From Macrostomum lignano (lineage: Eukaryota), in contig NIVC01003135.1 in NCBI GenBank assembly GCA_002269645.1, positions 1-31,867 on the forward strand: 31,867 bases of DNA, read 5' to 3'. The position numbers and the translations under genes are program-made. Below the pieces are notes generated by a model. It worked only from the letters and a program-made list of their open reading frames with translations, ran no database searches and had not been told where the DNA came from. Below, one piece after another: positions 1 through 27,490 of the stretch; positions within the stretch are counted from its first letter, which is position 1; every line of letters begins with the position of its first letter.

Positions 1-397
1 TCTGTTGCCATGCTGAGCCAGACACTTGACATATCTGAGGGCAGCGTTTTCACCATCCTGCATGAGAAGCTAGGGCTCAGGAAGATCACAGCTCATTGGG
101 TGCCCCATCAGCTCACTGAGGAGCAGCGGGTTCGCTGCAGTTAGGAGTTCTTGCGCTGCTTCGGTTCTGGTGGCACCAAGCGCCTCTCTGACATCGTTAC
201 CGGTGACTTGGCTCCGTGCGACTTCTGGGCCTTCCCGAAACTGACCGAGAGGCTGGCTGGGCGCCAATTTCAGAGGCCGCAAGACCTGGCACGCGCTCTC
301 AATTCAGAGTTGAGGGCATTCACTGAATTGGAGTACCGCGGCACCTTTGATTTGTGGCTACGGAGGCATCAAAAGTGACTACATAGAAGGACTGTAA
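1..397 (+). mobile_element. Decayed, internally deleted mariner (Tc1/mariner) transposase remnant, inside intron 1 of the SLC13 gene
   Basis: Frame 1 reads ...LGLRKITAHWVPHQLTEEQ (mariner WVPHEL motif), in-frame TAG at 142-144, then IVTGD joined directly to LAPCDFWAFPKL (YSPDLAPSDF motif). The mariner-type C-terminus DYIEGL* follows in another frame at 377-397. Confidence 0.85.
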
Positions 398-532
398 ACC
401 CTTACTTTTAGAATAATGAGCTTGCACTGGATTTTAGTAGTCTGTTGCCAAAACTTTGAATATGTGAGAGTGAATAAACTAAGGAAATGATGGCGGAGAC
501 TGGGAGCAAACGGCAGTGTGATCTCAGCTCAC

Positions 533-682
533 CATGGTCCCGATGCGGAACAGCAGGGGCAGCAGGGCAACCGGGATGCCCACCATGATGCACTGCACCC
601 GGTAGGCATAGACCACCTTCGCAGCAGTGCCAATGGCCCTGCCCAGGGTCGACAGAGCGCTGGCCGGTCGCTCCTGGTCCAT
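533..682 (-). CDS. First coding exon (50 aa) of an SLC13-family Na+/dicarboxylate-citrate/sulfate cotransporter; gene continues beyond the left edge
   Basis: MDQERPASALSTLGRAIGTAAKVVYAYRVQCIMVGIPVALLPLLFRIGTM|gtgag resembles the SLC13 N-terminus as recalled (LWAYRSYLIVFFVPILLLPLP), with a phase-0 donor where SLC13 intron 1 lies. An in-frame TGA lies 6 nt upstream of the ATG. Too short for the ORF track. Confidence 0.7.
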
Positions 683-2483: not shown

Positions 2484-3001
2484 TCAGTGGGACACGTCGG
2501 GCAGCAGCTGGGCAAAGGACTCGGCCTGCTTCATCAGCTTGAGGTGTCCGCCCGGCACGGTGGACCGCACAGCCGAGAGCTTCAGCACCACTCCAGACTT
2601 GAAGACGTCCTGCAGCTCTTCCTTGGACCTGGTGGCGATCTCGCGGATGTTGGCGCCGTCCTGCCCGATCACGCAGGCGAGGGCGCGCAGCGAGGGGCAG
2701 CGGATGCGCGCGCTGATGAACAAACGGCCGTCGCGGGAGCGGTCCAGGTCCAGCAGTTCGAAGCCCAGGCGGTACGGCACCTCCTGGGGAAGCAGGTCCA
2801 GGCAGCGGGCCCAGATGCACATGCGGACCAGGTCCAGCGGCTCCATGTCCGACAGGCAGGAGCTGTGGAAAAGCCACGGCCGGGGCAGCGCGATGGAGAA
2901 TAGGTAATCCCGGAGCCGGTCCACTCCGTGGCCCGTGGCGGCCGACACCATGAACACCTCCTGCGGATGGGGTGGATGGGTAGGCAGATGGAGACAGAAA
3001 C

Positions 3002-3098
<97 letters not shown>

Positions 3099-6000
3099 TA
3101 GACAGATAGACAGTATTCCCCCAGCAACCGGGTCTCACCTGGAAGCCGCGCCACGTGGCCTGGCCCTGAATCAGGCAGCCAATTTCGCGCCAGCGTCGCC
3201 GGCGCGCCAGGGCCTCCTCTTTGGTGACGGCGCCAAGCAGCATTTGCTCGCGCAGCCAAAGGGCGAACGGGTCCAGCTGCGAGAGGCTGGGCGGCCGCCC
3301 CCCGCTGGCCAATGCGCTACGGTCGTCGGCCTCGGCCAGGCTGGCGGGCAGCGGGTCGTCGTCTGTGAATGAAGGGATAAAGAGATCGAAATGAATTGGG
3401 AGAAGGGAAATGGAGATCACAGGCTAATCAGGGACAATGGAGGTCACAGGCTAATCAGGGACAATGGAGATCACAGGCTAATCAGGGACAATGGAGGTCA
3501 CAAGCTAATCAGGGACAATGGAGGTCACAGGCTAATCAGGGACAATGGAGGTCACAGGCTAATCAGGGACAATGGAGGTCACAGGCTAATCAGGGACAAT
3601 GGAGGTCACAGGCTAATCAGGGACAATGGAGGTCACAGGCTAATCAGGGACAATGGAGGTCACAGGCTAATCAGGGACAATGGAGGTCACAAGCTAATCA
3701 GGGACAATGGAGGTCACATGCTAATCAGGGACAATGGAAGTCACAGGGACAGTGGGGGATATGACAGTCTCAGGACACCGAGCTCACTCACCTTCGTTCT
3801 CAGTCGCCCCCTCACCGCCGTCGGGCACAGCCGTCAGCAGCCGTTGCTCGTCCGCTTCGTCGTCCAGCAGTGCGACTCGCCGGTTCTCCTCAAGCAGCAG
3901 CGGAGTCGGCGCGGGCGGGTTGGGGCCCCACATGAGAACGTCGGGCGGAGGCAACAGGTGCCGCTGCAGCCGCTCCACAGGGGGCACCAGGTACCGCTCC
4001 CAGCTCGGGTCCCAGCGGCCGTGCCAGTCGCTGCCGTCCGTGAGGGCGGCCTCGTCTGCGGCCTGGGCGGAAAATTCAACGGGTGAAGAGGGTTCCACAG
4101 GGTCAACCGATTGTGGAAGGTCCAGGGTTCGATTCCTAGGATCTATAACGTGTACGAGTATTTATTAGTCACGTTCCCGGATTCGGTTCCAACAATGGTC
4201 TTGGTCCGTAACATATATATAAGCCAAAGGTCCTGGGTTCGATTCCAGCAATCGATAGCTTTGGTCGGGAATGTGTAACGAGTACAGTAACCAACGTCCC
4301 GGGTTCGATGCCCCCAGTCAGCCAGGATCATCACCAACCAACCTCAGCGCGGCCCTCCAGCGCCTGCAGCTCGCGGACGGCCCGGTCGATGGCCTCGATG
4401 CGGCCGGCGTACTTGTCCACGTGGCTCACCCGGCCGGCCACCACACCGTCGGTGAGGCAGCGGACCGTGTCCAGCAGGCGCACCCGGCTGCCGCGCAGGA
4501 GGTCCACCTTGTTCAGCACCAGCACAGACGGCTTGTCGGCAAAGTAATGCAGCGCCTTCAGCACCTCCGGGTCCAGGCGGCTGCGCGACGGCTTGTGGGA
4601 GACGTCGGCCATCACCAGGATGAGGTCGGCCTGCGGGCAAGTGGCGGCAGCAGGTCACAAACTGGCACGTGATGCATCACCAGATTGCTTATCGTAAGGC
4701 AGAGACAAGGATATGAGGCTGAGAGAGGCGGAGAAGAGGAGCGGAGAGGAGGGGAGAGGAGCGGGGGAGAAGAGGGAGCGGGGGAGAAGAGAGGAGCGGG
4801 GGGAGAAGAGAGGAGCGGGGGAGAAGAGAGGAGCGGGGGAGAAGAGAGGAGCGGGGGAGAAGAGAGGAGCGGGTGAAAATAGGGGAGCGGGGAGAAGAGA
4901 GGAGCGGGGGAGAAGAGGAGAGTGGGGGAGAAGAGGGGAGCGGGGGAGAAGAGGGGAGCGGGGGAGAAGAGAGGAGCGGGGGAGAAGAGGGGAGTGGGGG
5001 AGAAGAGGGGAGCGGGGGAGAAGAGGGGAGCGGGGGAGAAGAGAGGAGCGGGGGAGAAGAGGGGAGCGGGGGAGAAGAGAGGAGCGGGTGAGAAGAGGGG
5101 AGTGGGGGAGAAGAGAGGAGCGGGTGAGAATAGGGGAGCGGGGGAGAAGAGGGGAGCGGGGGAGAAGAGGGGAGCGGGGGAGAAGAGAGGAGCGGGTGAG
5201 AAGAGGGGAGTGGGGGAGAAGAGAGGAGCGGGGGAGAAGAGGGGAGCGGGGGAGAAGAGGGGAGCGGGGAGAAGAGAGGAGCGGGTGAGAAGAGGGGAGT
5301 GGGGGAGAAGAGAGGAGCGGGTGAGAATAGGGGAGCGGGGGAGAAGAGAGGAGCGGGTGAGAATAGGGGAGCGGGGGAGAAGAGGGGAGTGGGGGAGAAG
5401 AGGGGAGCGGGGGAGAAGAGGGGAGCGGGGAGAAGAGGGGAGCGGGGGAGAAGAGAGGAGCGGGTGAGAAGAGGGGAGTGGGGGAGAAGAGAGGAGCGGG
5501 TGAGAAGAGGGGAGTGGGGGAGAAGAGAGGAGCGGGTGAGAATAGGGGAGGGGGAGAAGAGAGGAGCGGGTGAGAATAGGGGAGCTGGGGAGAAGAGAGG
5601 AGCGGGGGAGAAGAGGAGAGTGGGGGAGAAGAGGGGAGCGGGGCAGAAGAGGAGAGCGGGGGAGAAGAGGGGAGCGGGGGAGAAGAGAGGAGCGGGTGAG
5701 AAGAGGGGAGTGGGGGAGAAGAGAGGAGCGGGGGAGAAGAGGGAAGCGGGGAGAAGAGAGGAGCGGGTGAGAAGAGGGGAGTGGGGGAGAAGAGAGGAGC
5801 GGGTGAGAATAGGGGAGCGGGGGAGAAGAGGGGAGCGGGGGAGAAGAGGGGAGCGGGGGAGAAGAGGGGAGTGGGGGAGAAGAGGCGCAGTAAGATGGCA
5901 GTTGTAGACAAGCACTGGTACTGAGAGCTAATGAAACGAGGCAGGTGTTCATCAGCAGGTCCCACCTGAAACACGGTGGAGTGCACATCCCGCATGATGT

Positions 6001-6457
6001 AGTTCTCCAGGTTGAAGCGCTTTCGCCTCTGTTCGCTGAGCAGCCCCGGCAGGTCCAGGAAAACCAGCTGTGAGTTGCCCCGGGTGCTGATGACGGCCTG
6101 CTTGGAGCGGGTGGTGTTGATCCGCTGGGACACGGCGCAGGACCTGTAGCAGGACAGCATGTTGACCAACGAGCTCTTGCCCACGCCGGTGGGGCCCAGC
6201 ACGGCCACGCGCAGCAGGCGGGCATCGGGCGGCGAGTCCGGGCGCAGGTAGGAGAGCTTCTGCCACAGGCTGCGCGCCTTCTCGACCGACTTGTCCGCCT
6301 GCGCAGCGGCTGGAAGGTCGGCAGCTGCTGAGGCGGCGGCCCGGCTGAACAGCAGAGCCGGGAGTCTCTGCTGGTGGCAGCCGCCGCGGCAGATTCGAAC
6401 TGCCGACGAAACTGCAGCCTGGAGATTCGATGCAACAGTGCTTATGCTATTGTGCAT
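2484..6457 (-). CDS. ERAL1: Mitochondrial Era-like GTPase (12S rRNA chaperone), 5 exons: join(6457..5966, 4630..4343, 4062..3792, 3362..3139, 2960..2484), ~583 aa
   Basis: G1 GPTGVGKS, G2 TTR, G3 DLPG, G4 NKVD, G5 SAA, then PQEVPY and a KH domain (VIGQDGANIREI). All introns are GT-AG with compatible phases (0,0,1,0). The Ala/Arg/Ser-rich N-terminus resembles a mitochondrial presequence. The exon 3 donor could alternatively be at 3816. Confidence 0.93.
2990..3112. repeat. (CAGA)n microsatellite in ERAL1 intron 4
   Basis: Direct observation. Confidence 0.97.
3408..3745. repeat. 27-bp minisatellite (GGTCACAGGCTAATCAGGGACAATGGA) x~12 in ERAL1 intron 3
   Basis: Direct observation. Confidence 0.97.
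4115..4315 (+). repeat. Degenerate tandem array of ~55-66-bp units, each carrying a tRNA T-arm/B-box motif, in ERAL1 intron 2
   Basis: GGTTCGATTCC at 4126 and 4236, GGATTCGGTTCC at 4179, GGTTCGATGCC at 4302. Shared tgt(a)acgagta and ttggtc motifs lie between them. Confidence 0.6.
4725..5885. repeat. G/A-rich ~17-18-bp minisatellite (GGGGGAGAAGAG[A/G]GGAGC) filling ERAL1 intron 1
   Basis: Direct observation; about 60 variable copies. Confidence 0.96.
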
Positions 6458-6585
6458 GCTTTGGAGCTACTGAAAGTAGTATTATCTCTTTTATCATCCT
6501 GATAACCTGCTTCGACATACGGCCACACCTGCTGCTATGAGTAGTGAATGCTTGCTGCACCATCCATTATTCGACTGGACTGGCC

Positions 6586-7156
6586 CAGGTGAGCCGCTAA
6601 ATCCCCCCCTGGAGCACAGGTGAGCTGCTAAATCCCTACCAGGAGCACAGGTGAGCTGCTAAATCCCTACCAGGAGCACAGGTGAGCTGCTAAATCTCTA
6701 CCTGGAGCACAGGTGAGCTGCTAAATCCCCACCTGGAGCACAGGTGAGCTGCTAAATCCCTACCAGGAGCACAGGTGAGCTGCTAAATCCCTACCAGGAG
6801 CACAGGTGAGCTGCTAAATCCCTACCAGGAGCACAGGTGAGCTGCTAAATCCCTATCAGGAGCACAGGTGAGCTGCTAAATCCCCACCTGGAGTATAGGT
6901 GAGCTGCTAAATCCCCACCTGGAGCACAGGTGAGCTGCTAAATCCCTACCAGGAGCACAGGTGAGCTGCTAAATCCCTACCAGGAGCACAGGTGAGCTGC
7001 TAAATCCCTACCAGGAGCACAGGTGAGCTGCTAAATCCCTACCAGGAGCACAGGTGAGCTGCTAAATCCCTACCAGGAGCACAGGTGAGCTGCTAAATCC
7101 CCACCTGGAGCATAGGTGAGCTGCTAAATCCCGACCTTGAGCACAGGTGAGCTGCT
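6586..7156. repeat. 31-bp minisatellite (CAGGTGAGCTGCTAAATCCCTACCAGGAGCA) x~18 between MRPS2 and ERAL1
   Basis: Direct observation. Confidence 0.97.
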
Positions 7157-7392
7157 CATTTACTTTAGTAAAATTTATCGAAACACAAATATCAGAAAAG
7201 CACAGCTGTCTAGTTGCATACTTTTAATTCACAATAAACAGATATTAATAGGAACCGAGTGCACTGGACACGGATACTACTTGAAAACTAGCATGCATGC
7301 ATGGCTGCTCTATTACACAGAGGCGTGAAAATTCAGCGACAGATTAGAAAAAAGAGGAGCAGAGGAAACAATGATTGCGCAAAGGCCTCTCG

Positions 7393-10300
7393 TCAGTCGA
7401 GTTCGTCTCTGGGCGGTGGCGGCGGCGCCCGCGGCTTCCGGTGGCTGTCCGGTGACTGCGGACGCCGGGCAGAGGGCCGCAAGGGCTGCTGCCGAGGCTC
7501 CGAGCGCTGCCGACTCTGTCGCTGCTGGCTGGCAGATCCGGCGGCATCAGCGCCGGCCGAGTCCACCGGCTGTTCGGGCGGTCTGAGCGCCTGCGATTGG
7601 ACTCGACGAAATGCGTCGCGAGGGTCGGCAGCGGAACTGAAATTGGGAAGCGGGACGGCAGAGTCAGGATGGGACTCGGGTTGCCAGGGTGGAAAACTTT
7701 GGCTGTGTAGTGGCGTCTGGGTTTTGAAATGGCGTCTGGGTTTTGAAATGGCGTCTGGGCTTTGAAATGGCGTCTGGGCTTTTAATAAATGGCAACTGGG
7801 TCTTTAAAAATGGCATATGGATTTTCACAAATGGCATCTAGATTTTCAAAAATGGCACCTAGATTTTCAAAAATAACATCTGGGTTCTCACAAATGGCAT
7901 CAGGTTTTTTACAAATGGCATCTGGGTTTTCACAAATGGCATCTGGGTTTTTCACAAATGGTATCTGGGTTTTTACAAATGGCATCTGGGTTTTCACAAA
8001 TGGCATCTGGTTTTTCACAAATGGCATCTGGGTTTTTACAAATGGCATATGGTTTTTCACAAATGGCATCTGGGTTTTCACAAATGGCATCTGGGTTTTT
8101 ACAAATGGCATCTGGGTTTTCACAAATGGCATCTGGTTTTTCACAAATGGCATCTGGTTTTTCACAAATGGCATCTGGTTTTTCACAAATGGCATCTGGG
8201 TTTTCAAAATTGGCATCTGGTTTTTACAAATGGCATCTGTTTAGCTTCAACTTGGCGTTCTGATTCCGATTAAAAATGGTAATCGGGCTTGATAAAATGG
8301 CATACAAATTTAAAGGACTCTTGTATAAAAATGGTTCTCAGTTAAAACGCCTAAATCTCTAAATCCGATGCCAGAAAGCCGGATTCAACACCAACAGTGC
8401 CCTGTAGACCCCCCAGCCCACCGGCGCAGCCCGCACCAGGCCTCCTTGTCTCCGGCCGAACTGCCCTGCGGAGCCTCGGCCGACCACTGAGCGAAGGCGG
8501 CCTTGCCGCGCCTGATGGCCTCAGCGAAGAGCGCCATGTACAGCTGTATCGCCTGCGGCGAGTCATCGTTGCCGGGCACCGGGTAGGTCACCAGACGAGG
8601 GTCCGAGTTCGAGTCGCAGATGCCAACGGTGGGAATCATAACCTGTTGGATTGGGGTTGCTGGATTTTATCTTTGCACTCCTATACAAATGTACTGAGCT
8701 CAAAAAAGGTCGAAAAAACAAAAGCACCCAATCAAAGCTAGCACAACTCGGAGTTGGGGTCAAATGAAGCACCAATCTCAGAAAGTGCACAACATCTACT
8801 GGCAAGTTAAGGTCAAAGGTCAAATACTACATAATCGTAAGTTCTGAGGTCAAAGGTCAAAAAATATATACTGGCAATTGCTAAGGTCAAAGGTCAAATA
8901 CTACATTATGGTAAGTTCTGAGGTCAAAGGTCAAAAAATATATACTGGAAATTACTAAGGTCAAAGGTCAAATGCCTAATCCCAGCAATGACTAAAGGTC
9001 AAAGTGGCGCACCTTGGCACAGGCGGCAATGGCGGGATGCGGCAGCATGACGGGGCTCATGCAGGAGAGGAACACGGCCAGGTCGGGCAGCCGGGTGGCC
9101 GTATCGAAATAAGTGGCGGCATCGGTGACCGCCTGGTCCACCCAGGGCCGGGTGTAGGCGAATTCGCCCATCTCGGCGGCGCGTCGTTCCACCAGGGGCG
9201 ACAGGGCGGGCCAGCCCTGCCACAGGAACAGAACGATGCCGCCTCGGGCGGCCACGTGAGCGGTGAAGTTGAGGGCCCGGCGCAACAAAGGCGCCGTCTG
9301 CTCCAAGTCGATGATGTCGACGCCGCACCGGCAGCCAAAGAGGCTGGGCGTCATCCATTCGCTGCGGCAACCGGCCTTGTGGCCAAGGTGGACTCGGTGC
9401 TCCATCAGCTGGCGCTTGCTGACCAACCGGTTCACCTGGGCAACGGAGTGGGTGGTGGAGTCGGTCTTTTGAAGGCCGATTTAAGAAGAAGCTACCATAA
9501 TCGAGAAGAGTTTTGAAGGCCGATTTAAGGAGAAGCTACCATATTCGAGAAGAGTTTTGAAGGCCGATTTAAGGAGAAGCTACCATATTCGAGAAGAGTT
9601 TTGAAGGCCGATTCAAGGAGAAGCTACCATATTCGAGAAGAGTTTTGAAGGCCGATTCAAGAAGCTACCATATTTGAGGGAGGGGGGCCGTAGCCCAGCG
9701 GTAGCGCAGCTGCTCTGGTATGCCAGCGACCCAGGCTCGATTTCAAGTGCAGTCACATTAATTTGGGGCTGAATTGGAATCTCGGCTTGGCTCTGCTCGT
9801 GCAATTAACGGCCTTGAGAGCCAACCCCCCAAGGCACAGTGAAGTGTACATGCCTAACGTTAAAATAAAGTTAGGGCCGCTGTACACTCCTGTGTGAGTG
9901 TGTGCCTGCGTACGTATCCGCGCGCTTGTGTGCCTGCTCAGGGGAGTCGGCGGAATGGGCAGTAATGCCTCTCGCCGGTTGTGTGCCTATGTCGCTTAAA
10001 GTGCGCCAGGGTGCACACAACCCCCTGCCTCTAATAAAATACCATATTTGAGAAGAGTTTCGAAGGGCGATTTAAGAAGAAGCTACCATATTCGAGAAGA
10101 GTTTTGAAGGCCGATTTAAGGAGAAGCTACCATATTTGAGAAGAGTTTTGAAGGCTTATTTAAGGTGAAGCTATCATATTCGAGAAGAGCTTGGAAGGCT
10201 GGTTTAAAGAAGCAATCGCGAGACGGCTCAGGGACATGGATTTTGATTACCTGAAAGTAATCATCAATACGCAAGCTCTGCTCCATGGTGACATTCTTGG

Positions 10301-10451
10301 CTGGCTGCCAGTTAAGTGGAGAATCCGCCGCAGACGCAGGTGGCCCGGGTGCAGCGGGCGCTGCTGCGGGAGCGGCGGCCGCGCTGAAGCCAGCAGTTTG
10401 GGGCGGGCGCAGCAGCAGGCATCGGCGGAGGCAGCGGCCAACCAGCGCCAT
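7393..10451 (-). CDS. MRPS2: Mitochondrial ribosomal protein S2 (uS2m), 4 exons: join(10451..10251, 9435..9013, 8642..8437, 7636..7393), ~357 aa
   Basis: DDYFQ|[22 protein letters not shown]...DIIDLEQTA...ALNFTAHVA...RLPDL...AK|[28 protein letters not shown] are uS2m signature motifs. Introns are GT-AG with phases 0,0,2. Exon 4 (low-complexity tail) is less certain; without it exon 3 reads to the TGA at 8385. Confidence 0.93.
7710..8240. repeat. 20-22-bp minisatellite (AAATGGCATCTGGGTTTTCAC) x~25 in MRPS2 intron 3
   Basis: Direct observation. Confidence 0.96.
8806..9005 (+). repeat. 37-bp periodic (74-bp dimeric) array with five perfect AGGTCAAAGGTCA motifs in MRPS2 intron 2
   Basis: Motif starts at 8810, 8847, 8884, 8921 and 8958, with a partial copy at 8996. 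Confidence 0.9.
9467..10210. repeat. 44-bp minisatellite (TTTTGAAGGCCGATTTAAGGAGAAGCTACCATATTCGAGAAGAG) in MRPS2 intron 1, split by a SINE
   Basis: Units start at 9467, 9511, 9555, 9599 and 9643, and resume after 10040. Confidence 0.95.
9679..10039 (+). mobile_element. tRNA-derived SINE (~360 bp) with 13-bp target-site duplication
   Basis: A-box TAGCCCAGCGG (9691-9701), B-box-like GGCTCGATTTC (9734-9744) and an A-rich end (TAATAAAA). It is flanked by TACCATATTTGAG at 9666-9678 and 10040-10052. Confidence 0.85.
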
Positions 10452-13059
10452 AGGGGACCGCTGGAATAGATTTCGGGCAGAGTTCTGGTGATGTGCTTTA
10501 GTTCATGGTTACCAGCTGCAACACCTGCTTATTAAGCTTATGAATGTGATTTTGTGATGGGTCAATATTGAAAATTCCGAAGTAGACCCTTGCACGGCCT
10601 CGGCTGAGCTACCCCTATAGAATTGCATGCCATGTGGACATGGCAGTGCAAAGGACAAGCAAATATTCCCAAATATATGAAGCAATGCAGTGCACTATGT
10701 CTAAAATATCTATATATCTTGGGCTGATTGCTACATTTGAAAATCTATTCCAATAAGGACATAGCTTAAGCAATTGGTCTTAAAGTAATACTAATAACCT
10801 TTAGTTTACAAAAATATTTTAAATTTGTGCTAGTCCTAATAAGTGATAATGCTAATGTGGCACAGAAAGTGTCCAAGAGTTCTCTATAGCCCAAAAGGAA
10901 TGAGTGATAATGCTGATATGTTGCATAAGTGTCTGAGTTTTATATGGCACAAGGGGGTTATAGCTAGTATCTAATAAATGCTAAGTAGAAGAAATAACAG
11001 AAAGCATATTTACCAATTATAATTATTCTAAAGCATAAAGCACTCTAGAGCATATTTTGTCTCTATGTGACCAAAAATAGCTAGACATTTACTTAGACAG
11101 TGCAACCAAATGAAGCACTACCAAATTTTAACTATACTCTAGAAGGCATATATCATGCCAGAAAATTCTAGTTTGCATTTGATTTGGCCAAAGAATGTTG
11201 GCATCCATGGGCATGCATTTGGATATTGTATGGCAGAAGTGGCATGCTATGGTGTAAAAGAGCTTGATGGCATAGAATGTGGCATGAAAGTGGGACATGT
11301 CTTCTTGAGTGTTGAGATATGGCAGAGGGTGTTATAATTCTATATTATAGAACATACCATAGTTCTTGAAAATACTTGTAAATCTGCTTTATCTTATTTA
11401 TTTATACTGCAAAACAAAAATATTTTTGTGCGAGAAAATCTTTATATTATGTTTTAATTCTTATGGCATTTAAAAGTGTATTCTTCTGCTTTTTTGTATT
11501 ATAATTTATTGTCAATTTTTAATTTTTATAGCACAGTGTGCATAACATGTAATTGGCAAGCATGGCAACAACTGCATGCAATAGGTATGCAAACAAAAAA
11601 CTCTCTAGTATACATTCTGGCATGTATCCAACCTATAGTTTGGAACATTTTATATGTACCTCAGAAAAATACTATCTAAATCTTTGGTATAAGCCAATGT
11701 ACACTATATGCATATGCACTACTTTATGCAAAGCTCTAAATCATAAATTTTGAAATGATACTACTAAACTGATGATTTCAATATCTAAATTCAATTAGAC
11801 AAAGTTAAAAACTAAAAATAATAATTATATTTGTATAATGTTTCATATGTATAAAAAACAAAAGTAAAATTTGTACATTTTTGCCATAGTCTCATAAAGG
11901 CCTAATTTTAGGGAAAATTCCTATGTGCTATAATGTGTATTGACTTTTGAAAATTCACAGTGCACACAGAGTAGGTGTAGCCATTTCCACCAACATGTAG
12001 CTATGTGCTTAGTATGCATAGCAAATTGCATACTATTGCATAGCATGAAGGATAGTGTAGCTCATATTTATTAAGTTTTTTTTGGCTGCCATGGAAGTTA
12101 TGCTTGGCCAGCAGCCATGTTTTCCATATTGGGCCTTTAAGATATTAGGACAATAAATGACCTTTTTCGCAGTTGCAATATGGGATCTTTTTCAATATGC
12201 ACATAAAGTATATAGGCAATATACCTTTTTCAAAAAACACTAAGTAAAAAATTAAATAAAACTCAATAAATTTTTGTAACATTATTATTATAAATAATTA
12301 TCTGCTTAAACTAGACCTAATAAAAAATATGGATTTTATTACAACAACAAAAACTTATTTTGGCATAATCCTAGTTTTCCAAGTTGAATTATTTAGAAAA
12401 AAATTGAATTTCAGCCTATTTTATGACTGACTATATCAGCATGTCATCATAGTTTGCCTAGGATTATGCCTTTACTTTTATTAACAAAAATGTTAATTTA
12501 GTTTTTTTGGAATTTTTAATTTAGTTATTTTTTCCCACATTGCTTTTTTTCCCACTTCTAAAAAAACTTTTTTTTAACCTGATTAAATGCCAATTCATCA
12601 TACTGCTATGCTGCTATATTGCACAACAAAAAAACAAAAATAGGAGCTACATTGTCATACATGCTATGCAACAGCAGATTTTTAAACAGATCTTTGGCGC
12701 ATGACCAAGATGGCCACAGCTCTGAATGGCTGCTTGGATAGGAATAGGTCTATATATTTCCTCATTTTCTATTGGCTGTGATTGGGGTGGGGTATGACCT
12801 AGCTTCAAGTCTTAGAGAAGACAGATTTTGTTAGTGAAATTAGACTAAGTAAAACAAAAAACACTTCCCTTTATAGCAGGTATTACTACCTACTAAAGCT
12901 AGTAGCACTACTAGCACAAGACATTTGGTTTTTGTATCATGGATAATAGTTTCAAACCTATCTTCAATATACTAAAACTGACATGTTTTTTGTATATGTT
13001 AAATGTTAAAGGTAGAGGTTAAAGGTATTAGTTATGATAGAAGTAAGCAAAAATTGGAG

Positions 13060-17479: not shown

Positions 17480-18160
17480 CGGTGAAGGCAATGTCCTCAT
17501 TAGTGCCGGAACGATTGCACTTAATTTGCAGGATATGGGAGCTACTATTGTGCCCGGGAGGTGTTCCACTAACCGAGCTGCTACACTTGGCTGGATTATG
17601 CAGAAGTCGGGTGTCAGGGCTGTGAACGCGGCCTCCATCTTCATAAATGCAATAAACGCCACCGGCGAGGGCGCAGCTAACCCGTGGAAAGCATGCGAGC
17701 AGGTCTTGTGCTGGATGTGAACCCCTGCTGGTGTGGATGTACTGTAAGCAAAGAGTTGCACAGCTGACAGTGAAGAACTCGGCTTCGCTTTAGCACATAC
17801 CCGCCAACGTACTCAGCGAGGCGGCATCATTGCTTGCACCCTGCCGCGAGCCCAGCTTTTCTTGGAGCAGCTGCTGCTGTGGTGCCTGGCTTGCAAAACT
17901 GCTTGAGTTCGATTGGACCCGCTTCGGCCGGTATAGTCATGCAGTCTCCGGCACCGGTGGGGGCGCAGGCTGCTGTGATGGCAGCCTCGCAGTTGTCATC
18001 TTCGCAGTTGCGGGACGTCGAGTCAGGCTGCAGGGCCAGGCTGCTGGCAGTCACGGACCGCAGGGCATCGACGAAAGGAACTGCATGAGCTCTGGCCTGT
18101 CGTTAAAACCGTTGTGCCCGCGGATAATGCAGAAACATGTGTACATTGCTGCATGATCCC
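17480..18160 (-). mobile_element. Frameshifted P-element-superfamily (THAP9-like) transposase C-terminal remnant
   Basis: Successive minus-strand frames give IIRGHNGFNDRPELMQF, ALRSVTASSLAL...RNCEDD, AEYVGGYVLKR...HCQLC and GLAAPS...MEAAF. These follow the order of recalled P-transposase motifs (IRxxGGxNxNP.xQF; NCExD; YIAGYV..CxxC; GLxxPS). Confidence 0.6.
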
Positions 18161-22208: not shown

Positions 22209-25200
22209 TCACTCCACGCGCTCCACTTTGCCCACCACCTTGCCCTCCCACAGGGGCAGCAGGTCGCCATCCGCCGTCACCTCTTCGAAAACGGCGCCGC
22301 CAGTGTCGAATTCGTCGGAGCGCTTCTTGAAAAAGTAGCGGTAGGCGCCGCGCTTGGGCAGCAGGCGCTTGAACTGCGCCAGGCTGATCTCCGGCTGCGG
22401 CCAGTCGTGACGGAACGGCACCGAGTCGCCGCAGAAGAAATACCCGACGGTCAGCTGCGCCTGCGGCTGCTGCTGAGGCGGCTGCGGAGTCTGCTGAGAG
22501 GGTGGCGCCATCTGGAAGCGGCGGTGGGGGACCAGCGGCTGCAGGTTTGATAGAGCAGCACAGACAGACATGTGCCCGAGGTCTGTCGGGCATACGCCAG
22601 CTATGCATTGGAAATGCGTCAGGCTTTTATTATAGATGTGTCAGTGCTTGGGTTGGAAGTGTGTCAGTGCTTGGGTTGCAAGTGTGTCAGTGCTTGGGTT
22701 GGAAGTGTGTCAGTGCTTGGGTTGGAAGTGTGTCAGTGCTTGGGTTGCAATAGTGTCAGTGCTTGGGTTGCAAGTGTGTCAGTGCTTGGGTTGGAAGTGT
22801 GTCAGTGCTTGGGTTGCAAGTGTTTCAGTGCTTGGGTTGCAAGTGTGTCAGTGCTTGGGTTGCAATAGTGTCAGTGCTTGGGTTGCAAGTGTGTCAGTGC
22901 TTGGGTTGCAAGTGTGTCAGTGCTTGGGTTGCAAGTGTTTCAGTGCTTGGGTTGCAAGTGTGTCAGTGCTTGGGTTGCAAGTGTGTCAGTGCGTCAGTGC
23001 TTGGGTTGCAAGTGTGTCAGTGCTTGGGTTTGAAGTGTGTCAGAGCAGTGTTGCAAGTGTGTCAGAGCAGTGCTGCAAGTGTGTCAGAGCAGTGTTGCAA
23101 GTGTGTCAGAGCAGTGTTGGAAGTGTGTCAGAGCAGTGCTGCAAGTGTGTCAGAGCAGTGTTGCAAGTGTGTCAGAGCAGTGCTGCAAGTGTGTCAGAGC
23201 AGTGCTGCAAGTGTGTCAGAGGCTCACCATCTGCAGGCGCCGCCTGGCCTCCTCAATGACATTGTCGGTGTGCGGCCGGTCGAGTACCGGCATGTTCAAG
23301 TCGGAGGCCAGCGGTTGCCTTGGCAACGACATGCCGCCAGCCTGAGACGAGGCGTGCAGAGCCACCCGCTCGTGCAGCTGCCGGCCGGGGACGGCCGTAG
23401 CGGAGGTGGCGGTGGCGGCTGCCGCGGAGGCGACGTCCCCAAAGCCGAAGCGGGACCGGCTGGAGACGGTGCCGCCGAAGCCGGAGTCCGCAGTTGAGGG
23501 GGCCGCCGCCATCGCGGCCGCAGCTGTTGAGACGGCAGCGGCGGCGCTGCCGGGGACAGCGGCGGAGGTCGCGGCGGAGGAGCTGCAGCTGGTGGAGGCG
23601 CCAAGCGCCGCTGCTCCGCTGCGCTTGCCGACGACGCCGATGCCGCCACTGCTGCCGCTGCGTCCGCGGCCGCCGCTGCGACCTCCGCCGCGCAGGATGT
23701 GGTGGTGATGGTGATGGTGATAAACCAGCAGGTTCGGATCGGATATCGAGTGAGGCGCGCTGGCCCGTTGGTCAAGGACTTCGTGCACGTGTCTGGACGG
23801 GGCGGGTAGAGAAAGTTGAAGCCAATAGGAAAACTTGATGATGTCAAATCGGCAATATGCTCATACGCCTACTCACAAGTAGGCTGTAGAAAAATGTAGA
23901 AAACAATTTGACACACAAATATCATTTTCATATAAATTTCAGGCAAAAATCCAGCAGCTATCAGAAACCCCACGTCAGTGATCACACACGCATGTCAGAC
24001 AGTGATCACACACGCATGTCAGACAGTGATCACACGCCTGTCAGACAGTGATCACACGCCTGTCAGACAGTGATCACAGACGCATGTCAGACAGTGATCA
24101 CACACGCCTGTCAGACAGTGATCACACACCTGTTAGACAGTGATCACACACGCATGTCAGACAGTGATCACACACCTGTTAGACAGTGATCACACACGCA
24201 TGTCAGACAGTGATCACACACCTGTTAGACAGTGATCACACACGCATGTCAGACAGTGATCACACACCTGTTAGACAGTGATCACACACGCATGTCAGAC
24301 AGTGATCACACACCTGTTAGACAGTGATCACACACGCATGTCAGACAGTGATCACACACCTGTTAGACAGTGATCACACACGCATGTCAGACAGTGATCA
24401 CACGCCTGCCAGACAGTGATCACACACCTGCCAGACAGTGATCACACACCTGTTAGACAGTGATCACACACCTGCCAGACAGTGATCACACGCCTGCCAG
24501 ACAGTGATCACACACCTGTTAGACAGTGATCACACACCTGCCAGACAGTGATCACACGCCTGCCAGACAGTGATCACACGCCTGCCAGACAGTGATCACA
24601 CACCTGTAGCAGTCAGCACTAACGGGACAGCCATTAGCCTCACCTGTCTAAGATCTGCTCAGGCGTGTCAGACGAGCTGCTCTGCATCACCCGGCCGATG
24701 ATCCGCCGGGCCCAAGGCTCGTTCAGCAGGTCGCGCGCCGGGGGAGCCGACGGCTGGGGCAGCGGCTGCTGCTGTGACGGAGATTGCGAGCCGGCGGCTT
24801 TGGCGGCCGCGGCTGGTGGGGTAACCGCGGAGTCGCCGCCACCGGTGGAGCCGGCCGCCTGGCCGAGCAGCAGCAGCTGCTGCAGCTTGTCGGACAGCAG
24901 CCTGGCGAAGGCTGGCGGATTCGAAGTGGCGTCGCAGGCGGCCGTCGCTGAGGACGACAACGTCTGGGGCGGCGCGACGGCGGCTGCTGCGGCAGCTGCT
25001 GCTACGGCCCGCCTTCTCCGCCGACTGGCGACGGCGGCGCGGGCGGCCTCGAGACTGCCGCTGCCGGTGTCAGTCAGCAGCGACTGCGTGTCCGAGGTAG
25101 TGGTGGTCGGCGCGTCCGACGACAGCGAGGCCGTCTGCGGCAGCGAGTCCGGCAGGGAGGCGGCGGACAGCGAGCTGCCCACGTAGTATGGGAGAGCCAG

Positions 25201-27076
25201 GCCGGCCCTGCCCAGCCTGCGGGGGATTCGAGGGAATAACAGCTTGCAGCGGCATGCGCTGGCCCAGCAACTGGGGATCTGGGAGGCTGGTACAGCAACT
25301 GACACTCTGGGAAGCTGGCCCAGCAACTGGGGATCTGGGAGGCTGGCCCAACAACTGGGGATTTGGGAGGCTGGCCCAGCAACTGAGGATTTGGGAGGCT
25401 GGCCCAGCAACTGAGGATCAGGGAGGCTGGCCCAACAACTGGGGATTTGGGAGGCTGGCCCAGCAACTGAGGATCTGGGAGGCTGGCCCAGCAACTGAGG
25501 ATCTGGGAGGCTGGCCCAGCAACTGAGGATCTGGGAGGCTGGCCCAGCAACTGAGGATCTGGGAGGCTGGCCCAGCAACTGGGGATCTGGGAGGCTGGCC
25601 CAGCAACTGAGGATCTGGGAAGCAACTGAGGATCAGGGAAGCTGGCCCAGCAACTGAGGATCTGGGAGGCTGGCCCAGCAACTGAGGATCTGGGAGGCTG
25701 GCCCAGCAACTGAGGATTTGGGAGGCTGGCCCAGCAACTGGAGAGCTGGAAACGGAGTAGTCAGACGTTCGTGAAGCTCCTTACCCAGCGCAGTCGGCAG
25801 TAAAGGCGGCAGCGGCGCCCCGCTCCCGTACGGTGGCCATGAGGTTGCGGCTTGTGAGGTCCAGGGAGCCGCCGCCGCCGCTGTGGCAGGACCGCGACCG
25901 CGGCACGGAGCTCGCCCGGGCGTTGCGCGCCGCAGCCGCTGACGCCGCCCCGCCGCCACCGACAACGTCAGCAGTGGCGGCGGCCGCGGCAGCGGAGGAG
26001 GTCGCCAGCTCGAATCCAGAGCCGCCGCCGCGCTCGCCCCACCAGCGAGCGAAGCTGGGATAGACCCGGTGCGCAAGAAACTGCGCCACCTCCTGCACAG
26101 CGCAGTCGAACACGCTGGCGTCGCAGTCGTCGCCGGCCTGCAGTCGCTCGTGGATGCTCTGCCGCGCCGCCACACTGATAGGCAGGTGCTCCTCGCGGCG
26201 AATGTAGCGCCTGTCTATGGCCAGAACCACGCGGCGACACCTTGGGGCGAGGCCGGGAATTGAATGATTTGAAATGCAGATTGGAATGAATTCTAAGTTA
26301 GCGCAGAGCTGAAGGATTGGCTATTGTTCCTGAAGGATTGGCTATTGTTCCTGAAGGATTGGCTATTGTTCCTGAAGGATTGGCTATTGTTCCTGAAGGA
26401 TTGGCTATTGTTCCTGAAGGATTGGCTATTGTTCCTGAAGGATTGGCTATTGTTCCTGAAGGATTGGCTATTGTTCCTGAAGGATTGGCTATTGTTCCTG
26501 AAGGATTGGCTATTGTTCCTGAAGGATTGGCTATTGTTCCTGAAGGATTGGCTATTGTTCCTGAAGGATTGGCTATTGTTCCTGAAGGATTGGCTATTGT
26601 TCCTGAAGGATTGGCTATTGTTCCTGAAGGATTGGCTATTGTTCCTGAAGGATTGGCTATTGTTCCTGAAGGATTGGCTATTGTTCCTGAAGGATTGGCT
26701 ATTGTTCCTGAAGGATTGGCTATTGTTCCTGAAGGATTGGCTATTGTTCCTGAAGGATTGGCTATTGTTCCTGAAGGATTGGCTAGTGTTCCTGAAGGAT
26801 TGGCTATTGTTCCTGAAGGATTGGTCCTTGAGTGCGGTGCTTGGTCAAAGCCTAAAGAGACGCCGCCCACCTCCTGTCGCTGTATCCCTGCTCCTGCTTG
26901 GCCCGGAGGCCTCGCACGGCAAAGTAGAAGTCGAAGGCGCGGGCCTGCTTCGGCCAGGCGAGCTCCATGAACTGCTTGAGCAGCTGGACGCCCTCCGGAT
27001 CGTCCAGAAGGCCCTGCAGGCCGCCGTCGAGCCAGCGACATTCGCCGATGCCGCCGCCCTGGCCGGGGTTGGTCAT
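22209..27076 (-). CDS. AXIN: Axin (Wnt destruction-complex scaffold), 5 exons: join(27076..26871, 26240..25785, 25216..24644, 23792..23228, 22538..22209), ~709 aa
   Basis: RGS domain (RWLDGGLQGLLDDPEG...FDFYFAVRGL...VYPSF), PYYV, SLSSDA, GSK3-binding NPPAFARLLSDKL, beta-catenin-binding PEQILDRHV, poly-His, IEEARRRL and a C-terminal DIX domain (YFFCGDSVPF...YRYFFKKRSDEF...KVVGKVERVE). Introns are GT-AG with phases 2,2,2,0, and the exons sum to 2130 nt. Confidence 0.95.
22637..23220. repeat. 23-bp (GTGTGTCAGTGCTTGGGTTGCAA) grading into 22-bp (GTGTGTCAGAGCAGTGTTGCAA) minisatellite in Axin intron 4
   Basis: Direct observation. Confidence 0.96.
23975..24607. repeat. 24/26-bp minisatellite (core CAGACAGTGATCACAC) in Axin intron 3
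   Basis: Direct observation; the centre alternates 26- and 24-bp units. Confidence 0.96.
25258..25742. repeat. 28-bp minisatellite (CTGGGAGGCTGGCCCAGCAACTGAGGAT) x~17 in Axin intron 2
   Basis: Direct observation. Confidence 0.96.
26302..26823. repeat. 21-bp minisatellite (GAAGGATTGGCTATTGTTCCT) x~25 in Axin intron 1
   Basis: Direct observation; nearly homogeneous. Confidence 0.98.
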
Positions 27077-27184
27077 GACGACGGCAGCAACGGCTGCGGA
27101 GTCGATGCCGACCTGGTGCTGGCGGAGCTGCTAGCGAGCTGCGGGAGAGACCGCCCGAAGCCGCTGGTTTATGAGCTGCACTCA

Positions 27185-27490
27185 CTGGCCACAGACTATC
27201 AGAGCAGGTCTTTGTCGGCAGCACAACTGTCAGATCAGACAAATAAAAGCCAGCACAAAAAACTGGCCACAGACTAACAGCAGGTCTTTGTCGGCAGCTC
27301 AACTGTCAGATCAGACAAATAAAAGCCAGCACAAAAAACTGGCCACAGACTAACAGCAGGTCTTTGTCGGCAGCGCAACTGTCAGATCAGACAAATAAAA
27401 GCCAGCACAAAAAACTGGCCACAGACTAACAGCAGGTCTTTGTCGGCAGCGCAACTGTCAGATCAGACAAATAAAAGCCAGCACAAAAAA
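27185..27490. repeat. 76-bp tandem repeat x4 upstream of Axin
   Basis: Units start at 27185, 27263, 27339 and 27415. Confidence 0.96.

What the first reader, a model, noticed from the sequence alone, without database searches (positions are those of the whole stretch)
2484..10463. Candidate SL-trans-spliced mitoribosome 'operon': MRPS2 followed directly by ERAL1
Seen: the two genes are adjacent and co-oriented. Each start codon has a 3' splice acceptor just upstream with no upstream coding exon (MRPS2: ctattccag|cggtcccctATG, 9 nt; ERAL1: tactttcag|tagctccaaagcATG, 12 nt). An ATTAAA at 7223-7228 lies ~750 nt from the ERAL1 acceptor, and only ~180 nt once the 31-bp array is subtracted. Established: uS2m is a mitoribosomal small-subunit protein, ERAL1 chaperones the 12S rRNA 3' end during small-subunit assembly, and flatworms use SL trans-splicing to resolve polycistronic transcripts. 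Inference: a functionally coherent eukaryotic operon coupling a small-subunit protein with its assembly GTPase.
Basis: partly seen in the sequence, partly recalled or inferred. Interest (0 to 1): 0.75.

Follow-up and report, generated by a model that had tools for sequence, protein, structure and literature searches.

The report
Ordinary flatworm two-gene operon candidate
Two mitochondrial-ribosome genes (MRPS2 and ERAL1) sit head-to-tail in the flatworm Macrostomum lignano and probably form one of the thousands of ordinary spliced-leader operons already described there, but the pairing is absent from four other flatworms and co-transcription could not be tested.

Summary
The window is a whole contig (NIVC01003135.1) of the public Macrostomum lignano Mlig_3_7 assembly. 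Both genes are real, adjacent and on the minus strand: uS2m/MRPS2 (10460-7393) and ERAL1 (6418-2484).

The deposited gene models start exactly at a CAG acceptor. That is what the annotators' pipeline produces when it sets 5' ends from spliced-leader (SL) reads.
- For ERAL1 it is a different acceptor, 52 nt further downstream (exon starts at 6418).

The pair meets the published working definition of an M. lignano operon: co-oriented, with a repeat-adjusted gap of about 180-230 nt. About 15% of genes in this species meet it. No transcript spanning both genes could be checked.

Two results argue against a selected functional pairing. MRPS2 is not next to ERAL1 in four parasitic flatworms. In a paralogous M. 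lignano copy, a 16-kb Maverick/Polinton-like element separates the genes by 17.4 kb.

Verdict: a plausible but routine operon, and the functional-coupling claim is weak. Interest is low.

The parts
10461..10466 (-). MRPS2 5' splice acceptor TTCCAG (AG at 10462-10461). It matches the trans-splice motif [T/C]TNCAG, and the deposited CDS starts at 10460.
   Evidence: motif from PMC8629364
7393..10460 (-). uS2m/MRPS2 gene (PAA53098.1, BOX15_Mlig020589g2). Exons are 10460(ATG 10451)-10251, 9435-9013, 8642-8437 and 7636-7393, with TGA at 7395-7393. If the SL joins at 10460, its AUG is in frame and gives MRSP-MALVG...
7223..7228 (-). ATTAAA, the only canonical-type poly(A) signal between the MRPS2 stop and ERAL1. 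It reads ATTATAAA in the paralog.
6586..7156 (-). Minisatellite of 18.4 copies of a 31-bp unit that fills most of the gap between the genes. The paralog has the same array, split by a 16-kb mobile element.
6470..6475 (-). SL joined here gives AUG-UAG and then the genomic ATG at 6457. It is conserved in the paralog but is not the annotated 5' end.
6419..6424 (-). Annotated ERAL1 acceptor CTCCAG (exon starts at 6418). SL joined here gives AUG-GCU-GCA..., i.e. M-AAVSSAVRICRGG. The leader must supply the start codon, because the next in-frame Met lies after the P-loop.
6412..6417 (-). Third acceptor-like site, CTGCAG, 7 nt further on. It is the 5' boundary of the paralog's model (PAA74562.1). The SL AUG is out of frame here.
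2484..6418 (-). ERAL1 gene (PAA53097.1, BOX15_Mlig033511g1). Exons are 6418 (or 6457)-5966, 4630-4343, 4062-3792, 3362-3139 and 2960-2484, with TGA at 2486-2484.
535..682 (-). First coding exon of the next co-oriented gene, an SLC13-type Na+/sulfate symporter. It starts 1.8 kb after the ERAL1 stop (1.25 kb in the paralog) and could be a third cistron or an independent gene.

Best explanation
This is a tandem pair of nuclear genes for the mitochondrial translation apparatus in Macrostomum lignano: uS2m/MRPS2 followed by the 12S-rRNA chaperone GTPase ERAL1.

Each mRNA begins at a 3' splice acceptor with no cis exon upstream in the current annotation. The 35-nt spliced leader (...UUGCAUG) is therefore joined there. 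Most likely both genes are read from one promoter upstream of MRPS2 as a single precursor. MRPS2 would be cleaved and polyadenylated after the ATTAAA near 7223. ERAL1 would be released by SL trans-splicing roughly 0.8 kb further on, or about 0.2 kb once the 31-bp minisatellite is discounted. That makes it an ordinary two-gene SL-resolved operon of the kind assigned to about 15% of this species' genes.

At the annotated ERAL1 site (6418) the leader's terminal AUG is the start codon. At MRPS2 the leader's AUG is in frame, 4 codons ahead of the genomic AUG.

Shown: gene identity, gene order, acceptor-defined annotated 5' ends, distances and reading frames. Inferred: that the 5' ends are SL sites, that the genes are co-transcribed, and that the SL AUG is used. 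The MRPS2-ERAL1 pairing itself is most likely a lineage-specific accident of gene order among housekeeping genes, not a selected functional module.
For: - Identity.
- Source and annotation: the window is contig NIVC01003135.1, and the CDS coordinates are 10460-7393 and 6418-2484.
- 5' ends: four deposited models across the loci read start at the first base after CAG, and a fifth starts 2 nt after CTGCAG. The Mlig_3_7 pipeline (TBONE) set 5' ends from SL-read peaks (PMC5730564).
- Motif: all acceptors fit [T/C]TNCAG.
- No cis donor: no GTRAG donor occurs in the gap between the genes or in the 2.5 kb upstream of MRPS2.
- Spacing: the gap is 753-804 nt from ATTAAA to the acceptor, or 182-233 nt after removing the 571-nt array. 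The published operon rule is a repeat-adjusted distance under 1 kb, with a mode near 100 bp.
- Start codon: SL-AUG frames were computed. Use of the SL AUG as an initiator is documented in flatworms (Cheng et al. 2006, cited in PMC9851317).
Against: - No SL reads, long reads or spanning transcripts could be examined.
- The two genes carry different transcriptional-unit prefixes (Mlig020589 and Mlig033511). This hints that the RNA-seq assembly did not bridge them. The authors note, however, that such units break in repeat-rich gaps, and the naming rule is ambiguous.
- The raw gap of about 0.8 kb is far above the 100-bp mode.
- About 60% of SL-spliced M. lignano genes are not in operons, so trans-splicing of ERAL1 does not by itself imply co-transcription.
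- In the paralogous copy a 16-kb element separates the genes by 17.4 kb, yet ERAL1 keeps an intact ORF and an acceptor-defined 5' end.
- The 31-bp units contain weak donor-like sites (CAG|GTGGGG, G|GTAGGG) that could allow cis-splicing.
- An older gene model cis-splices upstream exons onto the MRPS2 acceptor.
Confidence: 0.55

Rival explanations
1. The genes are two independent transcription units. Each has its own promoter and each is SL trans-spliced as a monocistronic gene. ERAL1's promoter would lie in or next to the 31-bp array or in the 115-nt unique segment upstream of its acceptors.
For: - Most SL-spliced genes in this species are not operonic (PMC8629364).
- The raw gap is 0.75-0.8 kb.
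- The two genes have different transcriptional-unit prefixes.
- In the paralog, ERAL1 is intact and annotated despite lying 17.4 kb from MRPS2, with a 16-kb mobile element between them.
- The adjacency is absent from four other flatworms.
Against: - The repeat-adjusted distance of about 200 nt lies in the operon mode of the published bimodal distribution.
- No promoter evidence is available either way.
- RNA-seq reads cannot be assigned cleanly between copies that are 97-99% identical, so the paralog's annotation does not prove that it is expressed.
Confidence: 0.33
2. One or both acceptors are ordinary cis-splice acceptors joined to upstream non-coding 5' exons. For MRPS2 this could be the donor at 17573. 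For ERAL1 it could be donor-like sites in the 31-bp array. There would then be no SL involvement.
For: - The ML2-era model A0A1I8HNW8 joins exons 18078-17839 and 17723-17574 (donor G|GTTAGT) to the 10461 acceptor.
- Weak donors are present in the array units.
Against: - That model is chimeric. It also fuses MRPS2 to ERAL1 through a GC-AG pseudo-intron.
- Its upstream exons have no Pfam hit. They are only 80-85% identical at the protein level between copies whose DNA is about 87% identical there, which is not the pattern of a conserved coding exon.
- The later evidence-based annotation starts both genes exactly at the acceptor.
- No GTRAG donor occurs in either upstream region.
Confidence: 0.07
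3. The pair is a selected, functionally coupled operon. Co-transcription would be maintained because uS2m and its small-subunit assembly GTPase must be co-expressed.
For: - Both products act on the mitoribosomal small subunit (identities; roles from established knowledge).
- A random neighbour has only about a 1% chance of being a mitoribosome gene (my estimate, not computed).
Against: - The adjacency is absent in two cestodes, where ELP3 and LSM lie upstream of ERAL1, and in two trematodes, where nothing is annotated within 7-10 kb and tblastn finds no MRPS2.
- Flatworm operons in general are poorly conserved (PMC12582326).
- In nematodes, mitoribosomal genes are enriched in operons, yet most operons lack functional coherence.
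- A recent paralog tolerates a 16-kb insertion between the two genes.
Confidence: 0.1

Closest known systems
Macrostomum lignano SL trans-spliced operons (Wudarski et al. 2017; Ustyantsev & Berezikov 2021, PMC8629364)
   Same: Same species. The genes are co-oriented neighbours with [T/C]TNCAG acceptors at their annotated 5' ends. The gap is inflated by a tandem repeat and collapses to about 200 nt when repeats are subtracted. Two-gene operons are the commonest size (75%).
   Different: Nothing structural differs. This particular pair has not been individually described, and its co-transcription was not verified here.
C. elegans SL2-type operons
   Same: A polycistronic precursor is resolved by 3' end formation of the upstream gene coupled to SL trans-splicing of the downstream gene. 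Such operons are enriched for housekeeping genes, including mitochondrial ribosomal proteins (PMC1657053).
   Different: M. lignano has a single SL and no dedicated SL2, so a downstream position cannot be read from the type of leader. The gap here is 0.8 kb with a minisatellite, against about 100 nt in C. elegans.
SL-donated initiator AUG in flatworms (Cheng et al. 2006 J Biol Chem, as cited in PMC9851317)
   Same: The leader ends in AUG. At the annotated ERAL1 site, that AUG is the only usable in-frame start.
   Different: The phenomenon was shown experimentally in Schistosoma mansoni. Here it is inferred from the reading frame and an annotated 5' end only. An alternative acceptor 52 nt upstream would use a genomic AUG instead.

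Membership tests
M. lignano SL-resolved operon (operational definition of PMC8629364) | Immediately adjacent genes in the same orientation, with no opposite-strand gene between them | tested here: met
   Deposited annotation of the contig lists MRPS2 and then ERAL1 on one strand with nothing between them. My exon models agree.
M. lignano SL-resolved operon (operational definition of PMC8629364) | Downstream gene is SL trans-spliced (SL-containing reads at its 5' end) | tested here: inconclusive
   The annotated 5' end abuts a CTCCAG acceptor at 6419, and the pipeline used SL-read peaks. The reads and the 'TRANSSPLICED' tag for this gene could not be retrieved.
M. lignano SL-resolved operon (operational definition of PMC8629364) | Repeat-adjusted intergenic distance below 1 kb | tested here: met
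   From ATTAAA to the acceptor is 753-804 nt, or 182-233 nt after removing the 571-nt array. From the stop codon to the acceptor is 923-974 nt, or 352-403 nt adjusted.
Eukaryotic operon in the strict sense | A single polycistronic pre-mRNA from one promoter spans both genes, with no internal promoter | not testable with these tools
   No RNA-seq, long-read, CAGE or RAMPAGE data were reachable. Different transcriptional-unit prefixes are a weak hint against an assembled bridging transcript.
Conserved, functionally coupled operon | Adjacency of the two genes retained in other flatworm lineages | tested here: not met
   No MRPS2 gene or tblastn hit lies within 10 kb of ERAL1 in E. multilocularis, H. 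diminuta or S. rodhaini, or within 7.4 kb upstream in O. felineus. Other free-living flatworms were not available.
uS2m / MRPS2 | Ribosomal_S2 domain, closest to mitochondrial rather than bacterial or cytosolic uS2 | tested here: met
   Pfam PF00318 at 2e-32. Mammalian uS2m structures match at 1e-58 to 1e-61, against bacterial uS2 at about 1e-23.
ERAL1 (mitochondrial Era GTPase) | Era-type GTPase domain plus a C-terminal KH domain, closest to mitochondrial Era | tested here: met
   MMR_HSR1 at 1e-16. KH_2 is weak (0.004, below the curated cut-off). Human ERAL1 (8csp) matches at 3e-50, against bacterial Era at about 1e-21 or weaker. Flatworm orthologs are named 'GTPase Era, mitochondrial'.

The most novel reading that the evidence does not exclude
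The MRPS2-ERAL1 pairing is a selected co-expression module, and ERAL1's three closely spaced acceptors (6470, 6419, 6412) act as a switch. One uses a genomic AUG after an SL-made AUG-UAG mini-uORF. One depends entirely on the SL-donated AUG. One is out of frame and non-productive. ERAL1 output relative to uS2m would then be tuned after transcription, within a single operon.
Probability: 0.07. Interest if true: 0.5.

Novelty: new member of a known kind. Interest (0 to 1): 0.2.

Why it matters
If co-transcription were confirmed, this would be one more entry among the 10,458 genes already assigned to operons in M. lignano. It pairs two mitoribosome small-subunit factors, which is a tidy example but not a new principle.

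The more useful results are corrective:
- The ERAL1 mRNA most likely starts at a different acceptor and relies on the leader's AUG for initiation.
- The deposited 'partial' proteins are probably complete once the leader is added.
- The paralog carrying a 16-kb mobile element between the two genes is a ready-made natural test of whether ERAL1 expression needs the MRPS2 promoter.

Tried and rejected
UniRef representatives P0001 and P0022 were not on record. The cluster-member listing then gave the NCBI models and contigs.
- Supplementary tables of Grudniewska 2018 and 2016 were searched for ERAL1 and MRPS2, to obtain the 'TRANSSPLICED' flag. Only MRPS22 was found, flagged as trans-spliced. PMC8629364 has no supplements held.
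- The SL sequence itself is not in the window, so there is no SL RNA gene here and no assembly artefact carrying SL.
- I compared the window with the paralog to look for extra conservation upstream of ERAL1, which could have pointed to a promoter. This was uninformative: unique sequence is 96-99% identical everywhere, introns included.
- I tried to read operon membership from the gene names (Mlig020589.g2 and Mlig033511.g1). The papers do not define the naming rule well enough.
- I rejected the older chimeric gene model as evidence of a fused transcript, because it needs a GC-AG pseudo-intron and has unsupported upstream exons.
Full report
**What is there**

Read on the minus strand, the region holds two intron-containing genes with GC-rich exons and minisatellite-filled introns.

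I built exon models from canonical GT-AG junctions.
- Gene 1 has exons 10451-10251, 9435-9013, 8642-8437 and 7636-7393, giving 357 aa.
- Gene 2 has exons 6457-5966, 4630-4343, 4062-3792, 3362-3139 and 2960-2484, giving 583 aa.

Gene 1 is uS2m/MRPS2. It hits Pfam Ribosomal_S2 at 2e-32. Its best solved-structure matches are mammalian mitochondrial uS2m at 1e-58 to 1e-61, aligned from residue 18 of both proteins. Bacterial uS2 scores only about 1e-23.

Gene 2 is ERAL1. It has an MMR_HSR1 GTPase domain at 1e-16 and a weak C-terminal KH_2. Its best structure match is human mitochondrial Era (8csp) at 3e-50. Flatworm orthologs are named 'GTPase Era, mitochondrial'.

**Where it comes from**

The ERAL1 model is 99% identical to Macrostomum lignano UniRef entries. 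Cluster members include NCBI proteins PAA53098.1 (MRPS2, BOX15_Mlig020589g2) and PAA53097.1 (ERAL1, BOX15_Mlig033511g1). The MRPS2 model's contig is listed as 31,867 bp, which is the length of the window, and both models lie on it.

The look-up returned the window itself as NIVC01003135.1 of assembly GCA_002269645.1 (Mlig_3_7). The deposited CDS coordinates convert to 10460-7393 and 6418-2484. My exon structure agrees with the deposited proteins, including the low-complexity fourth MRPS2 exon.

**Checking the observation**

- ttccag| has its AG at 10462-10461, 9 nt before ATG 10451.
- tttcag| has its AG at 6471-6470, 12 nt before ATG 6457.
- ATTAAA lies at 7228-7223.
- The 31-bp array spans 6586-7156 (18.4 copies).
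- ATTAAA to the acceptor is 753 nt, or 182 nt once the array is subtracted.

Both acceptors fit the trans-splice motif [T/C]TNCAG reported for this species (PMC8629364). The motif occurs at 0.0031 per nt on this strand. Two placements within 12 nt of a start codon are therefore not chance.

**The correction**

The deposited proteins are flagged 'partial' and begin RSPMALVG... (MRPS2) and AAVSSAV... (ERAL1). In DNA terms, each CDS starts at the first base after a CAG.
- For ERAL1 it is at 6418, after a different acceptor (ctccag|, 6424-6419).

The same holds for the duplicate contig and, for MRPS2, for the paralog. The paralog's ERAL1 model starts 2 nt after a third site (ctgcag|), 7 nt further on.

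The annotators built these boundaries with a pipeline (TBONE) that cuts transcripts at peaks of SL-containing reads (PMC5730564). Several annotated 5' ends that all sit at a CAG| acceptor are therefore indirect evidence that these are SL trans-splice sites. I could not see the reads or the per-gene 'TRANSSPLICED' flag.

**Consequence for translation**

The M. lignano leader is CGGTCTCTTACTGCGAAGACTCAATTTATTGCATG. I joined it at each candidate site.
- At 10460 it reads AUG-CGG-UCC-CCU-AUG. The leader's AUG is in frame and gives MRSP-MALVG...
- At 6418 it reads AUG-GCU-GCA, giving M-AAVSSAVRICRGG..., a plausible mitochondrial presequence. The next in-frame Met lies beyond the GPTGVGKS P-loop, so at this site the leader must supply the initiator.
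- At 6411 the leader's AUG is out of frame.

Use of the flatworm SL's terminal AUG as an initiator is documented for Schistosoma (Cheng et al. 2006, as cited in PMC9851317). This is therefore a known mechanism, inferred here and not shown.

**Is it an operon?**

The published working definition for M. lignano has three parts: adjacent co-oriented genes, a downstream gene that is SL-spliced, and a repeat-adjusted distance under 1 kb. The distribution peaks near 100 bp, and repeats are known to inflate these gaps.

This pair meets the definition. The adjusted distance is 182-233 nt from the poly(A) signal and 352-403 nt from the stop codon. No GTRAG donor lies in the gap or in the 2.5 kb upstream of MRPS2, which fits acceptors that have no cis partner.

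Several points argue the other way.
- Only about 40% of SL-spliced genes are operonic.
- The raw gap is about 0.8 kb.
- The two genes carry different transcriptional-unit prefixes. The naming rule is unclear, and the authors say such units break at repeat-rich gaps.
- The 31-bp units contain weak donor-like sites.

I put co-transcription at about 0.55. Independent promoters with monocistronic trans-splicing come in at about 0.33.

**Other copies in the same genome**

Contig NIVC01000290.1 is 99.8% identical to the window over 16.4 kb and has the same arrangement.

Contig NIVC01000939.1 carries a copy that is 96-99% identical in unique sequence. There, MRPS2 (384,743-388,884) and ERAL1 (406,260-411,213) are 17.4 kb apart. 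A 16,018-bp insertion sits inside the 31-bp array, leaving 5.4 units on the MRPS2 side and a longer run on the ERAL1 side.

The insert has the following features.
- Terminal inverted repeats of about 690 bp.
- An ORF hitting the double-jelly-roll capsid-like domain.
- An ORF hitting the A32-type packaging ATPase.
- Type-B DNA polymerase fragments split across several frames.

These make it a Maverick/Polinton-like element. Close adjacency was therefore the earlier state in both copies. That ERAL1 copy keeps an intact ORF, so either transcription reads through 16 kb, or ERAL1 has its own promoter, or that copy is silent. This is the most useful natural test.

**Functional coherence**

ERAL1 loci in four other flatworms show no MRPS2 nearby, either as an annotated gene or by tblastn within 7-10 kb.
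- In Echinococcus multilocularis and Hymenolepis diminuta, ELP3 and an LSM gene lie upstream of ERAL1.
- In Schistosoma rodhaini and Opisthorchis felineus, nothing is annotated within 10 kb (7.4 kb upstream in O. felineus, where the contig ends).

Flatworm operons are in general poorly conserved (PMC12582326). [quoted passage not shown]

The pairing is therefore best read as a lineage-specific neighbourhood of two housekeeping genes. I give selected coupling about 0.1.

**Surroundings**

Upstream on the same strand lies an Axin-like gene (DIX domain at 1e-24, weak RGS) that ends at 22209. It is followed by about 11.7 kb of repeats, which includes an AT-rich stretch (about 30% GC over 11-13 kb) extending down to the MRPS2 acceptor.

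An older ML2 gene model (A0A1I8HNW8) fuses exons at 18078-17574 to MRPS2 and to ERAL1 exon 1. It needs a GC-AG pseudo-intron, and its upstream exons have no family hit. I treat it as a prediction artefact, though it is the one piece of evidence for cis-splicing onto the MRPS2 acceptor.

Downstream of ERAL1, at 1.8 kb (1.25 kb in the paralog), a co-oriented SLC13 symporter gene begins at 682. It could be a third cistron or an independent gene.

**Verdict**

The operon reading is reasonable, fits published criteria and remains unproven. The 'functionally coherent operon' claim is weak. The arrangement belongs to a well-described and abundant class in an already annotated genome, so it ranks as a new member of a known kind with low interest.

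Noticed in passing
L005 14540 to L006 9040 (contig NIVC01000939.1, about 389,282-405,299): A 16,018-bp insertion sits inside the 31-bp array of the paralogous copy. It has terminal inverted repeats of about 690 bp (98.8% identical). Its ORFs hit DJR-like capsid (3e-5), Pox_A32 packaging ATPase (5e-6) and DNA_pol_B_2 fragments split across frames. This is a Maverick/Polinton-like element with a broken polymerase frame.
   Followed up: partly
window 6412-6475 (minus strand): Three [T/C]TNCAG acceptors lie within 60 nt at the ERAL1 5' end. Joined to the SL, they give a genomic-AUG start after an AUG-UAG mini-ORF, an SL-AUG-dependent start, or an out-of-frame AUG. The deposited 'partial' proteins are probably complete once the SL AUG is added.
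   Followed up: partly
window 1-400 (+ strand): A mariner/Tc1-like transposase remnant with an in-frame stop lies inside what appears to be the first intron of the downstream SLC13 gene. It was read by eye from the translation.
   Followed up: no
window 22209-27300 (minus strand): Axin-like gene upstream of MRPS2: DIX domain at 1e-24 (22209-22571) and a weak RGS hit (25781-26230). Several long minisatellites lie in its introns.
   Followed up: partly
window 535-682 (minus strand); L006 16200-23637; L007 15732 onward: A co-oriented SLC13 Na+/sulfate symporter gene starts 1.25-1.8 kb after ERAL1 in all copies, and its exon 1 is 100% identical between the window and the paralog. Whether it is a third cistron is open.
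   Followed up: partly
window 10559-11475: The window carries about 900 nt of extra AT-rich DNA compared with the paralog. It begins just upstream of a 98-nt block before the MRPS2 acceptor that is 96% identical between the copies. It may be a small insertion close to the presumed promoter or outron.
   Followed up: no
window 17574-18078 (minus strand): Exons of the old chimeric model A0A1I8HNW8 end in a plausible donor (G|GTTAGT at 17573). They have no family hit and are only 80-85% identical at the protein level in the paralog. They may be a non-coding or lineage-specific transcript.
   Followed up: partly
window 6586-7156: Each 31-bp unit of the array between the genes contains a CACCTG E-box and weak splice-donor-like sequences (CAG|GTGGGG, G|GTAGGG). 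The significance is unknown, and minisatellites also fill every intron of both genes.
   Followed up: no
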